Below, in pieces: positions 6,608 to 10,941 of a DNA stretch of 64,000 nt. Position 1 is the first letter of the stretch; the number at the start of each line of letters is the position of its first letter. The translations under genes were made by a program, and so were the position numbers. Origin of the DNA: Salpingoeca rosetta (taxonomy: Eukaryota; Protista; Choanoflagellata); assembly GCA_033442325.1 (NCBI GenBank), contig JAWQFM010000036.1, positions 381,501 through 445,500 of the forward strand, written 5' to 3'. The notes below the pieces were generated by a model. It worked only from the letters and a program-made list of their open reading frames with translations, had not been told where the DNA came from and ran no database searches.

Positions 6608-7755
6608 CCTGTTGACGTGTATGAGCGCTACACAGGCAGGGTAATGGGAAATGGGAATGTGAGCGTGAGAGCGGGTAATAGGGGGGGGGGGGCATGATCC
6701 TATGATCGGGTGGTTGGGTAGCGATTGTGCATGGCAGGATGATAGGTAACGCGTAGGGCGTGGCAATGGAGCAGCAGTTTGTGCGATGATGCGAGGCGGG
6801 CAAAACACCTCCGCTATATGCTCACCTTTCTTCCGAGAAGCGTCACCACAAAACAAACGGGACAACAAGCACCCAGTTGCTCGTGCGGCGCTGGGTGACG
6901 TCGGGATGGGGATGGGGATGGGGATGGATTGGTGGGTGTTGAAAGTGAGTGTGTGTCGTGGTATGTGTGTGTGTGTGTGTGTTTCGTGGTATGTGTGTGT
7001 GTGTGTGTTTGTGTGCGTGGCTGTGTTGTGTGTGATTGTTGTTTGTGGGTGGGGCGTCGATGGTTTTATTGCTCAAAGTTGGGGAATAGGGGAAGGGGCG
7101 AAGAGGAAAATTCACACACATCATTCACGAAAGGAGGGAGTGGGCTAACGGTAATTTGAAGTTGGCGGCAATAGTGTTGTTGTTGTTGTTCTGTTGTCGC
7201 TGTGGTGGTGCTGCGTTTCGTTGAGGTGAACACGAATGCGGCAGCACTACCAGCAAGCGCATCATGTGCTAGTTACATACTTCTTCTTCTCCATGTTGTT
7301 CAGACAGTGAGTGCTTGCCAATCGTTTTCCGAGTTGGCGACACCGCACCAACAATGTGTGCGTGTGACTGAACATGCAACGGGCTCTCTGGATTGCTTGG
7401 ATTGGGGGGTTCAATACGAAGAATAGAAAGCAAGATGGAAACCTGCGTTCAGATCGATTAGGAACGAAAAAGGGAAAGGGAAAGGGAAGAAACAGCGCAA
7501 GCAACAGTGAAGAGAGGGGAGGGGGGAGGCACGCCACCATGAGGGGCGTGAAGAAAGACAACGCGCAGCAGCGCAAAGCGAGAGAAAAAACGACGCAAAT
7601 GAGAAACACAACACCAACTAGTTGGAGGGGGGGGGGGAACGACATCCAATCACGCCAAATCTCGTCGTCTGTTCACATGTCGATACACACATACACACAC
7701 ACACACACACACACGAATGTAAAGAGACAACACAACGCATGTTTGACGCCAACAA

Positions 7756-8133
7756 TCACAGGTCGTCGTTGTCGTCGAGGGAGGATGGCACTCCAACGAG
7801 GCCGCATGTTGCATCCTGCATGTCATTGAAGATGTTCAAGGCGGCCGAGGCAGAAAATGGGGCTGCCTTGGCTGTCGCTGATGGTGCCGTTCCAAAGCAG
7901 AACGGGTCTGGTGCAAACTCATCCAGACTCAAGTCCAGCGCGTCATCCGAGCCGTTAGCATCACCAAACGCTCTGCACACACACACACACACACAAGTGT
8001 GCGTGAAGCAGTGTTTCATCCACGAATTGTGGAGTGGTGTTGCATGGCAGATGAGAGCGTGTACGTGTTGACATGTGGGATGCCTTCGCGTCGCCGACAC
8101 ACACACACAGACAGACTCACACGCACGCATACT

Positions 8134-8172
<39 letters not shown>

Positions 8173-9177
8173 TGCCAGCTTGTCCTGGAATGGGTCTGGG
8201 ATGTGCATGTCATCGTCGTTCATGGGCATCCTCTCAACAGGCTTGTCCCACCATGCTCGCGTTTCCTTCCGCTGCTGCTGTTGCTGTGTTGCTTTCATCG
8301 TGCTTGCAGGCATGGCCAGCCCCTTGGTGGCGTTGGCCTGCTTGAGGGCGCCTGGGCGGAGGGCGAGCTTGCTACTGCTGCTGGTGTTGGGGTTGATGGA
8401 ACTGTTGGTGCCTGACTGGTCAGCGCGCACACCAAGCTTCTTGGACGCCTTGCGCGCCGATGGGAAGCCGGGCGTCTTGCCGGCCTTGAGCACGTGGCTG
8501 TTGTTGCTCACATCGCCCAGTGCACGCCGCGGCGTCGCAGCCACAGTCTTGTTTGGGAAAGGAGTGGGTGAGGGGAAGGTGTTGAAGTGGAGGGAGTGAG
8601 AGACGCAGTATGTGGTCGCGTATGAAGTGCGTATATGTTTGTGGATGTCACGAAGCGAGAATGTTTGTGGATGACACAAACATGCGTTTCTCTCCATCTT
8701 CGTCTCTGTTTTCTTGTGAAGAGAGCAAACAACGAACAACACGCCACAAGTGGCGCCCGCCACGCGTTTGCGCACCATTGCTCAGTTGCCTACCTTGGCT
8801 GTAACTGGGGTCATGGACGGTTGTGTGTTGAGACCGTCCTTGCGAGACGCAAGCCCTGGTGAGTTGTATTGAAATGGCGCGCGCGTGCGTGTGCGTGTGC
8901 GTGTGTGTGTGTGTGCGTGTGTGTATGGTGTGTAGAATAGCAGCGGTGATGAACGGGTGTGAGCGAGGAGTGTTGGTTGACGTGAGGGAATGGCACACCG
9001 TAGAGAATAGTCCAAGGGTTGACAAGGAAAAGCGAAGAAACTCAAACGTACAGGGACACACTAAACACCAAACACATGGACACACGCACACACACCTTTT
9101 CTTGGGGAGCGCATCTTGTTGGCAGCGGTGCCTGGTCGCCCAATGTCTGGGTCGACAAATACGGTGAACGTGGACAT
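7756..9177 (-). CDS. Securin-like (PTTG1/Pds1/Cut2-type) D-box protein, ~245 aa. Exons 9177-9096, 8855-8794, 8547-8171, 7972-7756
   Basis: Four exons join in frame via GT-AG introns (phases 1,0,2). N-terminus MSTFTVFVDPDIGRPGT...RKDGL, D-box RRALGDVSN, basic N-half, KPVERMP motif, acidic C-half. Gene structure is well supported; the securin identity is inferred. Confidence 0.7.
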
Positions 9178-9356
9178 GGCGTTGCTGTTTCGTGGGGTTG
9201 CCTGAAAGGAGCGTGAGCGCCAACGACGGTTGTGTGGCAGCGCGCCAAGAGTAGCAGGTTGCACATGAGCACGCGAACTACACACAAACACACACACAGG
9301 CAGGCAGGCAGGCAGGTAGACAGACGACAGACGGACACACACACACACACACACAC

Positions 9357-9419
<63 letters not shown>

Positions 9420-9486
9420 ACACACAGACACACACACACACAGAGACACACACACACACACACACAGACACACACGCACTCGCTGG

Positions 9487-9502
9487 TTCAAAATTTGCCC
9501 GC
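9487..9502 (-). promoter_or_regulatory. Candidate CDE/CHR (DREAM/MuvB) cell-cycle element GCGGGC-AAAT-TTTGAA
   Basis: Exact TTTGAA with a G/C hexamer 4 nt upstream, adjacent to a putative 5'UTR intron donor (9479; acceptor 9202) of the securin-like gene. Confidence 0.5.
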
Positions 9503-9578
9503 CGACTGGCTTGTTGTGGTGACGGGAGTTGTGAGAAAATAAGGCAAATTTTCCCAACTTCGATCAAGAAAACCAACG

Positions 9579-10941
9579 ATGATGACGACTGCGCGCTGGC
9601 TCGCAGTTGTTGTTGCTGCGACTGCTGTGCTGCTAGCGTGCTGTGACAAGGCACTTGCGTCGAGCCCAAAGGACTACAACCAACACGTGAGTACAGCAAA
9701 ACGACGTGTGCGCGTACGTGTGCGTGTTTGTTTGTGTGAGTGCGTGTGCGAAACATGTATCTTTCCTTCCCGAACACACTGTTGTCCACACATACAAGCA
9801 CGCATGCATGGTTTTCGATGGTTTCCGTCTACTGATTCTCCATACTGCACAGGTAACCGTGTCCGTGCTTGGCGCACGCTGGAGTTATGACTCTGCCGTT
9901 GTGGCGGCAAGGGTAGTTCATGTCGTGCAGGCGCTCCACAGTAGGTACGGTGACTATTCCGTCTCTTCCTCTCTTTTTTGTTTGTTTTGTGTTGGAGAAG
10001 TACGCGCTCATCAGCATCGTTATTGCAGAAACAACATGTTGCAGCGTGTTCTATGTTTCAGCGCCGCGCAGCAACTTCCCGCGTTCACATCACAGCGTTG
10101 TTGTGCATGCACATATATAGAGGCCACAATGTCACGCTTCGATTGCAAGAGTGCTGGCGGGAGGATGGTGCGTGCAAGACGCGGCAGCGGCAGACTGGCG
10201 AGCCACCTCTGTGGTGGTACCCACGCGTGCTCATGTCAGCAGATGCAGCGCAAGGGGAGCCAATCACCTATTCAGGAGCGCTTACGACGCATGCACTGGA
10301 TGCATACATTACGCAGCTCGCACAGCCGCTCCAACCCATCGACTTCAACGCTGGTCTTTCGCGCACAAACGCAGATGGCAGCACAGAGAATGCGAAAGAA
10401 GCCGAGCAAAGTGCAGCGTATACAGAGGATGACAGGCACATGGTGGAGGTGGCGGGGTACGATGAAGGGCACGTGGTTGAGGAGGAAGAGGAGGAGGAGG
10501 AAGAAGTCGGTGCGCGCGAAGACACGGCAGCAGGCACCAGGCAGAAACTCAATGATCGTGATCATGCTGAGGACGATTATGGTGATGATGATGGTGATGG
10601 TGATGATGATGGTGGTGGTAATGAGTGTTGTACAGAGCAGAGGCGTGCAGACGAGTGGCAGCAGATGTGTGAGGACAAAGTGTGTATCGTGATATTTGAC
10701 GACGTGCATGACAGGGCTTCAGCTGCTGCTGGTGATGATGGCAATGACGACGACAGCAACGGGGGCGACGGGAGGTCCCATCCGACAAACCAGGCCAGTG
10801 TTGTGCGCGCACACCTACGCGCACACGCACACACACGCCCACGGCGCCCGCCTGTCATGCACATCGCGAGTCGTCTGATTGCGGAGTTTCAAGATGCGTT
10901 TCTGCCACGGCAGGTCGAACTGCTTGCATCACCGCTGGTGG

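What the first reader, a model, noticed from the sequence alone, without database searches (positions are those of the whole stretch)
7756..9177. Probable choanoflagellate securin, visible only after splicing four small exons
Seen: ~245-aa spliced product MSTFTVFVDPDIGRPGTAANKMRSPRKGLASRKDGL...TPRRALGDVSN...WDKPVERMPM...acidic tail. Known: human securin starts MATLIYVDKENGEPGTRVVAKDGL, has a D-box (RKALGTVN) in a basic half, then the separase-blocking segment PEIEKFFP and an acidic half; securins diverge too fast for routine homology detection. Inference: same motif order, size and charge polarity suggest a true securin bridging fungal and animal forms. The KEN box is absent (VDPD instead of VDKEN).
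Basis: partly seen in the sequence, partly recalled or inferred. Interest (0 to 1): 0.72.

Follow-up and report, generated by a model that had tools for sequence, protein, structure and literature searches.

The report
Probable choanoflagellate securin gene
A small, expressed, spliced gene of a choanoflagellate (public name PTSG_11236, labelled only "hypothetical protein") encodes a disordered protein whose conserved motifs, in order, match those of securin, the protein that holds back chromosome separation. It is therefore the best candidate for the securin not so far reported in the closest relatives of animals, but binding to separase is untested.

Summary
A minus-strand gene with four coding exons plus one 5'UTR exon encodes 245 aa. 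RNA reads and transcript contigs show every splice junction. The product is letter for letter the public Salpingoeca rosetta protein PTSG_11236, "hypothetical protein".

The securin reading is plausible but not proven; I put it at about 0.6.
- **For:** the gene is single copy and the protein is disordered.
- **For:** its only relatives among 1.84 billion representative proteins are two choanoflagellate orthologues and metagenome fragments.
- **For:** the most conserved block, D-[KR]-P-[VI]-E-x3-N-D-D-[DE], has an invariant Glu and no Arg three residues on, as expected of a separase pseudosubstrate.
- **For:** an L-x-G-V-P-x-x-L-D-D motif matches the human hydrophobic stretch, and the protein has a basic N-terminal part and an acidic C-terminal part.
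- **For:** language-model neighbours include two securin clusters.
- **Against:** there is no Pfam Securin hit, no match to solved securins and no KEN box. The residue at P1 is small (Pro, Gly or Thr), not a large hydrophobic one.
- **Untestable here:** separase docking.

I class it as a new member of a known kind, of moderate interest.

The parts
9480..9509 (-). 3' end of a non-coding 5'UTR exon. The transcript start lies further upstream and is not mapped. The exon contains a CHR-like TTTGAA (9487-9492) after a GC-rich element.
   Evidence: Loose ends at 9201 in X22, X6 and X8 read on into 9480-9509. Sequence.
9202..9479 (-). 5'UTR intron of 278 nt, GT..AG on the minus strand, holding a long (CA)n tract.
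   Evidence: loose ends; sequence.
9096..9201 (-). Exon with the 5'UTR tail and coding exon 1 (ATG 9177; residues 1-27 plus the first base of G28).
9151..9168 (-). ABBA motif FTVFVD (residues 4-9), consensus Fx[ILV][FY]x[DE]. Proposed Cdc20-binding degron.
   Evidence: regex: present in all three full-length orthologues and in 0.5% of shuffles. Consensus from PMC5717348. Cyclin A2 instance PAFTIHVDE from PMC6712056.
8856..9095 (-). Intron 1 (240 nt).
   Evidence: Joint in reads and contigs.
8794..8855 (-). Coding exon 2 (residues 28-48).
8548..8793 (-). Intron 2 (246 nt).
   Evidence: Joint 8547/8794.
8171..8547 (-). Coding exon 3 (residues 49-173 plus two bases of R174).
   Evidence: The same exon limits are seen in metagenome fragment P0006.
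8500..8529 (-). D-box RRALGDVSNN (residues 55-64). It fits RxxLx[D/E][hydrophobic]xN[N/S] at every specified position. It is preceded by the Cdk-type site T53-P-R-R.
   Evidence: 5e-5 of shuffles. Identical in M. roanoka and P0006. B. monosierra has Leu at P1. Consensus from PMC5717348.
8209..8253 (-). Most conserved block, WWDKPVERMPMNDDD (residues 147-161). D149, P151, E153, N158, D159 and D160 are invariant across the four sequences aligned. Proposed separase pseudosubstrate, with E153 at P4 and P156 in place of the P1 Arg, followed by an N-x-x-D-hydrophobic element.
   Evidence: Alignments; regex. Human 113-EIEKFFP and NPLDFE from PMC6858450 and PMC10317155.
8173..8202 (-). IPD (164-166, LPE-like) and the amphipathic stretch PFQDKLA (167-173). 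Proposed exosite contacts.
   Evidence: Only partly conserved: LPN in P0006, none in M. roanoka or B. monosierra.
7973..8170 (-). Intron 3 (198 nt). It is in frame and free of stops, with low-level retention in run X21.
   Evidence: 340-aa read-through ORF; 16-letter gap in the contigs; depth about 0.8 inside the intron in X21.
7756..7972 (-). Coding exon 4 (last base of R174, residues 175-245, TGA 7758-7756). The 3'UTR runs to about 7724.
7900..7932 (-). Conserved acidic-hydrophobic motif LSLDEFAPDPF (188-198).
7771..7800 (-). LVGVPSSLDD (232-241). It resembles human securin LSGVPLMILDEE, part of the hydrophobic stretch aa 136-146.
   Evidence: Human sequence as printed in PMC11524581. Role of aa 136-146 from PMC10317155.

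Best explanation
PTSG_11236 is most likely the securin of Salpingoeca rosetta, and its orthologues the securins of other choanoflagellates. Securin is a disordered stoichiometric inhibitor of separase that the APC/C destroys at anaphase onset.

Shown:
- The gene is real, spliced as modelled, expressed and single copy.
- The family conserves an N-terminal ABBA motif, a canonical D-box next to a Cdk-type TP site, a central block with an invariant Glu, and acidic-hydrophobic C-terminal motifs.
- The N-terminal part is strongly basic and the C-terminal part strongly acidic.

Inferred mechanism:
- The ABBA motif and the D-box dock on Cdc20 and the APC/C. There is no KEN box.
- Phosphorylation of T53 next to the D-box may tune the timing of destruction, as in yeast securin.
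- The block P-V-E-R-M-P lies in the separase active site as an uncleavable mimic of the (S/D/E)xExxR site. E153 sits at P4 and Pro156 replaces the P1 Arg.
- The following N-D-D-D-M, I-P-D, PFxxKLARAF, EFAPDPF and L-V-G-V-P-S-S-L-D-D elements run antiparallel along separase exosites, as in human securin residues 111-202.
For: - **Gene and expression:**. Single copy. Separase is present in the genome.
- **Family and conserved blocks:**
- **Motif statistics:** the full D-box occurs in 5e-5 of shuffles and an ABBA motif in 5e-3. The ABBA motif is in 3 of 3 full-length orthologues. There is no ExxR in the S. rosetta protein.
- **Charge:** residues 1-148 have net charge +19 (pI 11.8) and residues 149-245 have net charge -15 (pI 4.05). 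The orthologues show the same polarity.
- **Disorder:** Atlas model pLDDT 0.44 and no Pfam domain.
- **Language-model neighbours:** clusters named Securin (Mollusca, score 0.90, 183 of 256 features) and securin with PF04856 (Chordata, 0.90, 176 of 256) are the only function-named clusters listed.
- **Defining securin features in the literature:** N-terminal degrons plus an invariant Glu in a conserved patch (PMC6690013); pseudosubstrate EIEKFFP with a non-Arg P1, and an LPE motif (PMC6858450); NxLxΦE and the hydrophobic stretch 136-146 (PMC10317155).
- **Comparison with human securin as printed in PMC11524581, by eye, collinear:**
  - LIYVDKENGEPGT against FTVFVDPDIGRPGT;
  - RKALGTVN against RRALGDVSN;
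  - IEKFFPFNPLDF against VERMPMNDDDM;
  - LSGVPLMILDEE against LVGVPSSLDDND.
- **Host cohesin:** Rad21 carries P-I-E-P-G-R, sharing P-[IV]-E at P6-P4 with the candidate block.
- **Prior surveys:** none found a securin in choanoflagellates (PMC3195147), and no paper in the library names PTSG_11236.
Against: - No Pfam Securin (PF04856) hit at E up to 10 for any family member or in the six-frame genome search.
- No solved securin chain was matched by sequence or by family profile.
- Exhaustive phmmer and the word search with the family profile reach no animal, fungal or plant securin.
- There is no KEN box.
- P6 is Pro, not S/D/E. P1 is Pro, Gly or Thr, whereas solved securins place a large hydrophobic residue there.
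- The LPE-like motif is not conserved across the orthologues.
- B. monosierra lacks the P1 Arg of the D-box.
- Local alignment of the candidate to the Rad21 cleavage region is no better than shuffles: 82% of shuffles score as high.
- The Atlas tool itself warns that hits near 0.90 are leads only.
- The comparison with human securin was done by eye on short motifs. Separase binding was not tested.
Confidence: 0.6

Rival explanations
1. It is an APC/C-Cdc20 substrate or regulator with another job. Examples are an Acm1-like pseudosubstrate inhibitor of the coactivators, or a lineage-specific mitotic or cohesion factor. On this reading the central acidic block binds some partner other than separase.
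For: The ABBA motif and D-box are shared by cyclin A, Acm1 and BubR1, not specifically by securins. No profile or sequence link to securin was found. The P1 residue and P6 Pro depart from solved securins.
Against: - There is no cyclin box and no Sororin, Shugoshin, Geminin or any other Pfam domain.
- The strongest conservation lies outside the degrons, in a Glu-centred block followed by acidic-hydrophobic motifs, as in securins.
- L-x-G-V-P..LDD matches the human separase-binding stretch.
- The nearest named language-model clusters are securins.
- The genome has a separase but no other securin candidate turned up.
Confidence: 0.28
2. It is a fast-evolving disordered protein unrelated to cell-cycle control, and its degron-like and securin-like motifs are chance resemblances.
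For: Short linear motifs arise easily in disordered sequence. All resemblance to securin rests on short motifs. Formal searches are negative.
Against: A perfect ten-residue D-box occurs in 5e-5 of shuffles and an ABBA motif in 5e-3. Both are kept at the same place in orthologues that are only 37-48% identical overall. Five motifs are collinear with human securin.
Confidence: 0.1
3. It is not a real protein-coding gene, that is, a mis-spliced or non-coding transcript.
For: Nothing beyond the low-complexity introns and low-level retention of intron 3.
Against: Spliced RNA in runs from three studies. The same model appears in the public annotation. Protein-level orthologues exist in two other choanoflagellates.
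Confidence: 0.02

Closest known systems
Human securin PTTG1 (O95997, 202 aa) and metazoan securins (Pfam PF04856)
   Same: - Small disordered protein with a basic N-terminal part and an acidic C-terminal part.
- The N-terminus has hydrophobic-V-D...G-x-P-G-T.
- The D-box is of the R-x-A-L-G-x-V type.
- A [IV]-E-[KR] patch lacks a P1 Arg and is followed by N-x-x-D-hydrophobic.
- L-x-G-V-P...L-D-[DE] is present.
- All of these occur in the same order.
   Different: - No KEN box; a canonical ABBA motif is present instead.
- P6 is Pro and P1 is Pro, not Phe.
- Linkers are longer: 98 residues from D-box to Glu against 54 in human.
- The protein ends right after the GVP..LDD motif, whereas human securin continues for about 50 residues.
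- No PF04856 hit.
Plant securins PATRONUS/RSS1 (PMC6690013)
   Same: These were identified in spite of extreme divergence by the same logic: N-terminal degrons plus an invariant Glu in a conserved patch. The monocot-to-alga patch W-A-[KR]-[DEG]-G-[VI]-E resembles the choanoflagellate [WYF]-[WYF]-D-[KR]-P-[VI]-E.
   Different: The plant proteins have experimental proof (separase interaction, genetics) and a PSI-BLAST chain to animal securins. Neither exists here.
Fungal securins Pds1 and Cut2
   Same: The same functional plan of N-terminal degrons and a C-terminal separase-binding pseudosubstrate. Yeast securin has Cdk sites next to its degrons (PMC4195823), and here T53-P abuts the D-box.
   Different: No sequence-level resemblance was tested or seen here.
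Cyclin A2 N-terminal degron module, and Acm1
   Same: An ABBA motif (cyclin A2 FTIHVD against FTVFVD here) combined with a D-box.
   Different: There is no cyclin box and no KEN. The ABBA motif sits at the extreme N-terminus, upstream of the D-box. The conserved acidic C-terminal part has no counterpart in cyclin A or Acm1.

Membership tests
Securin (functional class) | Small, intrinsically disordered protein | tested here: met
   245 aa. Atlas model pLDDT 0.44 and pTM 0.11. No Pfam domain. 18% order-promoting residues.
Securin (functional class) | N-terminal D-box degron | tested here: met
   RRALGDVSNN at 55-64 fits all specified positions of RxxLx[D/E][hydrophobic]xN[N/S]. It is conserved in M. 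roanoka and P0006. B. monosierra has Leu at P1.
Securin (functional class) | N-terminal KEN box | tested here: not met
   No KEN in any family member. An ABBA motif occupies the N-terminus instead.
Securin (functional class) | Conserved patch with an invariant Glu, in an ExxR-like site that lacks the P1 Arg | tested here: met
   E153 is invariant within the most conserved block. The residue three positions after it is Pro, Gly, Thr or Pro in the four sequences. That this patch actually occupies the active site is inference.
Securin (functional class) | P6 acidic or Ser, and a large hydrophobic residue at P1 (solved securins, PMC10317155) | tested here: not met
   P6 is Pro151 (invariant). P1 is Pro, Gly or Thr.
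Securin (functional class) | LPE-type docking motif 11-14 residues after the pseudosubstrate | tested here: inconclusive
   IPD at 164-166 in S. rosetta and LPN in P0006. Absent in M. roanoka and B. monosierra.
Securin (functional class) | Hydrophobic stretch after the docking motifs (human aa 136-146, IAHLPLSGVPL) | tested here: met
   LVGVPSSLDD in S. rosetta and LLGVPDSLDD in B. monosierra, against human LSGVPLMILDEE. Compared by eye with the sequence printed in PMC11524581.
Securin (functional class) | Direct binding to and inhibition of separase | not testable with these tools
   Separase is present, but its catalytic domain is split over at least four exons. No full-length protein id could be obtained, so no complex job could be set up.
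Securin (functional class) | APC/C-dependent destruction at anaphase onset | not testable with these tools
   Only the degron motifs can be read from the sequence.
Pfam PF04856 Securin (sequence family) | Match to the family profile | tested here: not met
   No hit at E up to 10 for P0001, the separate exons or the orthologues. No hit in the six-frame genome search. A profile-profile comparison could not be run because no securin alignment was available by reference.
ABBA-motif APC/C ligands (cyclin A, Acm1, BubR1, Bub1) | Fx[ILV][FY]x[DE] | tested here: met
   FTVFVD, FTVFVD and FPVFRD at residues 4-9, 4-9 and 5-10 of the three full-length orthologues.
Cyclins, sororin, shugoshin, geminin | Their Pfam domains | tested here: not met
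   No such hit at E up to 10.

The most novel reading that the evidence does not exclude
Choanoflagellate securin is an ABBA-plus-D-box substrate with no KEN box. On this reading the N-terminus of vertebrate securin (T-L-I-Y-V-D followed by KEN) is a decayed ABBA motif. The securin of the last common ancestor of animals and choanoflagellates would then have bound Cdc20 through ABBA, as cyclin A does. That predicts different timing or checkpoint sensitivity of securin destruction in choanoflagellates.
Probability: 0.25. Interest if true: 0.6.

Novelty: new member of a known kind. Interest (0 to 1): 0.45.

Why it matters
Securins diverge so fast that they are missing from the annotation of most eukaryotic lineages. 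A published survey found none in choanoflagellates (PMC3195147). The plant securin was recognised only in 2019.

A credible candidate in S. rosetta would complete the separase control circuit in the sister group of animals. I know S. rosetta as a choanoflagellate laboratory model; no tool result here bears on that. The candidate gives a concrete gene to tag and mutate, and it offers an outgroup for how animal securin acquired its KEN box.

It is an expected component rather than a surprise, so the value lies in annotation and enabling experiments.

Tried and rejected
- **Pfam scans.** I scanned each exon, the 340-aa read-through ORF, P0001 and all family members. Only noise came back (DUF3460, E 0.08-0.3).
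- **Solved structures.** phmmer and a family profile against PDB sequences gave EGFR tail, KaiA and histone-like noise, and no securin chain.
- **Sequence searches.** The word-index search with exon 3 and with the family profile returned only the family itself. Exhaustive phmmer gave three relatives, all choanoflagellate or metagenome. PF04856 in the six-frame genome gave nothing, and the control genomes cannot validate that search.
- **Mimicry of the host cohesin site.** I built the Rad21 linker in a script from L020. The P-I-E-P-G-R site shares P-[IV]-E with the candidate, but local alignment is no better than shuffles (82% of shuffles score as high), so it counts only as a three-residue motif match.
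- **Separase docking.** This was abandoned. The catalytic domain is split over at least four exons. The upstream 689-aa ORF matches no solved separase. Length limits kept the annotated full-length protein out of reach, and the four-chain limit rules out exon pieces. No complex-prediction job was sent.
- **Cdc20 docking.** I considered this and dropped it.
- **Joined exons.** Full-length searches used P0001, the public protein returned, which equals the exon model.
- **Whole human securin.** The only copy is text in a paper and has no reference, so I did not feed it to any tool. The comparison is by eye on short motifs.

Full report
**1. What is there**

The finding lies on the minus strand. 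Reading it directly and translating the pieces gives four coding exons:
- 9177-9096, residues 1-27 plus one base;
- 8855-8794;
- 8547-8171;
- 7972-7756, with TGA at 7758-7756.

They are separated by GT..AG introns of 240, 246 and 198 nt. The CDS is 738 nt, or 245 aa.

RNA data confirm the model. Raw stranded RNA reads from two runs and transcript contigs from two further runs of other studies show the joints 8547/8794 and 8855/9096. The 852- and 874-nt contigs cover 7724-9201 in spliced form. The 16 contig letters left unlaid between 7965 and 8180 are exactly the 7+9 nt expected from the third intron. That area was masked as repeat by the tool.

First mates lie on the + strand, as expected for a minus-strand RNA. 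The contigs and reads continue from 9201 into 9480-9509.

A word search with exon 3 returned a 245-aa public protein, P0001, "hypothetical protein PTSG_11236 [Salpingoeca rosetta]". Its sequence equals my exon model. The genome size, 55.4 Mb, fits that organism as I recall its size; the assignment rests on the protein record. The gene is single copy.

**2. Relatives**

Pfam gives nothing for the exons or for the whole protein. PDB sequences give only noise.

An exhaustive phmmer over 1.84 billion representative proteins found just three relatives:
- P0002, Microstomoeca roanoka, 214 aa, 48% identical in the alignment;
- P0004, Barroeca monosierra, 198 aa, 37%;
- a metagenome exon fragment, P0003, with a longer member of the same cluster, P0006.

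A profile of these found nothing more in the word index, in PDB or in Pfam. So this is a small, fast-evolving choanoflagellate family without any detectable HMM-level link to known families.

**3. Anatomy of the family**

Five blocks are conserved against a poorly conserved background.

- **(i) N-terminal ABBA motif.** Residues 4-9 are FTVFVD. M. roanoka has FTVFVD and B. monosierra has FPVFRD. This is a complete match to the ABBA motif Fx[ILV][FY]x[DE] (PMC5717348). It is nearly the cyclin A2 instance, PAFTIHVDE (PMC6712056). An ABBA match anywhere occurs in 0.5% of shuffles of the protein.
- **(ii) D-box.** Residues 55-64 are RRALGDVSNN. This fits the ten-residue D-box RxxLx[D/E][hydrophobic]xN[N/S] at every specified position, seen in 5e-5 of shuffles. 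It is preceded by the full Cdk consensus T53-P-R-R. B. monosierra has Leu at P1, a departure comparable to the Val-P1 D2 box of cyclin A2.
- **(iii) Central block.** Residues 147-161 are WWDKPVERMPMNDDD. This is the best conserved block: D149, P151, E153, N158, D159 and D160 are invariant across the four sequences aligned.
- **(iv) Acidic-hydrophobic motif.** Residues 188-198 are LSLDEFAPDPF.
- **(v) C-terminal motif.** Residues 232-241 are LVGVPSSLDD.

No member has a KEN box. Residues 1-148 carry net charge +19 (pI 11.8) and residues 149-245 carry -15 (pI 4.05). The orthologues show the same polarity. The ESM Atlas model is disordered (pLDDT 0.44).

**4. Comparison with securin**

The literature defines securins by four things:
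- N-terminal KEN and D boxes plus an invariant Glu in a conserved patch (PMC6690013);
- a pseudosubstrate that mimics (S/D/E)xExxR but lacks the P1 Arg, human 113-EIEKFFP, where changing FP to RE makes it cleavable (PMC6858450);
- downstream NxLxΦE and LPE motifs and a hydrophobic stretch at aa 136-146 (PMC10317155);
- extended antiparallel binding along separase.

The human sequence is printed in PMC11524581. By eye, the choanoflagellate blocks are collinear with it.

| Human securin | S. rosetta protein |
|---|---|
| LIYVDKENGEPGT | FTVFVDPDIGRPGT |
| RKALGTVN | RRALGDVSN |
| IEKFFPFNPLDF | VERMPMNDDDM |
| LPE | IPD |
| LSGVPLMILDEE | LVGVPSSLDDND |

In the third pair the [IV]-E-[KR] core is shared, and the N then D-hydrophobic follows at nearly the same spacing. 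In the last pair, LSGVPL lies inside the human hydrophobic stretch 136-146.

With E153 at P4, the P1 residue is Pro in S. rosetta, Gly in M. roanoka, Thr in B. monosierra and Pro in the metagenome fragment. It is never Arg. The S. rosetta protein contains no ExxR at all.

The monocot-to-alga securin patch W-A-[KR]-[DEG]-G-[VI]-E also looks like [WYF]-[WYF]-D-[KR]-P-[VI]-E.

A protein-language-model search lists a Mollusca cluster named Securin (score 0.90, 183 of 256 features). It also lists a Chordata securin cluster carrying PF04856 (0.90, 176 of 256). These are the only function-named clusters shown. The tool warns that such scores are leads only.

**5. Context**

The genome encodes a separase, with Peptidase_C50 pieces at C1:3267246-3270127. 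It also encodes two Cdc20-family coactivators; the one on C22 is Cdh1/Fzr-like.

The Rad21 gene lies at C11, about 496600-500700, on the minus strand. Its only frame-compatible GT..AG junction gives ...DDMAPIEPGR-APELGR-DDTTDIS...ALPDE.... This is a tandem pair of ExxR sites. The first shares P-[IV]-E at P6-P4 with the candidate block, as expected of a pseudosubstrate.

This support is weak. It is a three-residue match, the junction has no RNA check, and a local alignment of the two regions is no better than shuffles.

**6. What speaks against**

- All formal homology tests are negative.
- KEN is absent.
- P6 is Pro rather than S/D/E, and P1 is small rather than a large hydrophobic residue.
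- The LPE-like motif is not conserved in the family.
- The human comparison is by eye on short motifs.
- Separase binding was not tested.

I could not set up a complex prediction. The separase catalytic domain is split over at least four exons (one search shows the Cys exon, LMMGCSSG, as a piece of about 30 aa). No full-length protein id was obtainable, and exon pieces exceed the chain limit.

Full-length work used the public record P0001. The whole human securin has no reference, so no alignment statistic with it was computed.

**7. Verdict**

The best explanation, at about 0.6, is a choanoflagellate securin that uses ABBA plus D-box degrons and a P-V-E-R-M-P pseudosubstrate.

The main rival, at about 0.28, is another APC/C-Cdc20 substrate or regulator. 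Chance motifs in an unrelated disordered protein take about 0.1.

A 2011 survey found no securin in choanoflagellates (PMC3195147), and the paper library does not mention PTSG_11236. So this is a new member of a known kind: useful, testable in a laboratory model, but expected rather than surprising.

Noticed in passing
window 7973-8170 (-): Intron 3 is 198 nt, in frame and free of stop codons, so a 340-aa ORF reads straight through it. Run X21 shows low depth (about 0.8) inside it. Retention would insert 66 Cys/Val-rich residues between the pseudosubstrate block and the C-terminal motifs.
   Followed up: partly
window 9480-9509 (-): The 5'UTR exon holds TTTGAA (a CHR-like element, 9487-9492). 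It follows a 4-nt spacer after the GC-rich GCGGGC, 7-12 nt before the 5'UTR splice donor. It is inside the transcript, so it lies downstream of the transcription start. This could mark G2/M regulation; it was not tested.
   Followed up: partly
window 9579-9690 (+): A divergent neighbour gene starts at most about 70 bp beyond the mapped part (9480-9509) of the 5' exon of the securin-like gene, whose true start is unmapped. Its first exon encodes a signal-peptide-like start ([22 protein letters not shown]...). This suggests a very short bidirectional promoter.
   Followed up: no
window 9072-9095: A 24-nt stretch at the start of intron 1 is also laid by many reads and by a 797-nt contig. These carry C instead of G at 9079 and continue into unrelated sequence. 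It is probably a short repeat shared with another transcribed locus, not a variant of this gene.
   Followed up: no
L020 = G000:C11:496001-501200 (-); exons at L020 3537-3685 and 3032-3183: S. rosetta Rad21 has tandem ExxR motifs straddling an exon junction (PIEPGR then APELGR). They are followed by an acidic run and an LPD motif about 30 residues on. These are candidate separase cleavage and docking sites.
   Followed up: partly
G000:C1:3264289-3266355 (+) (L005 2289-4355): A 689-aa open frame just upstream of the separase catalytic exons matches no solved separase. It carries a weak SAP-like stretch (residues 482-519, E 0.03 to THO1 SAP). It is unclear whether it is part of the separase gene.
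   Followed up: no
P0005 (ENA metagenome fragment, 121 aa): This fragment carries ATPRRALRDVQNT, the family's D-box context, but not the DRPIE...NDDD block. It may be an exon of a more distant relative.
   Followed up: no
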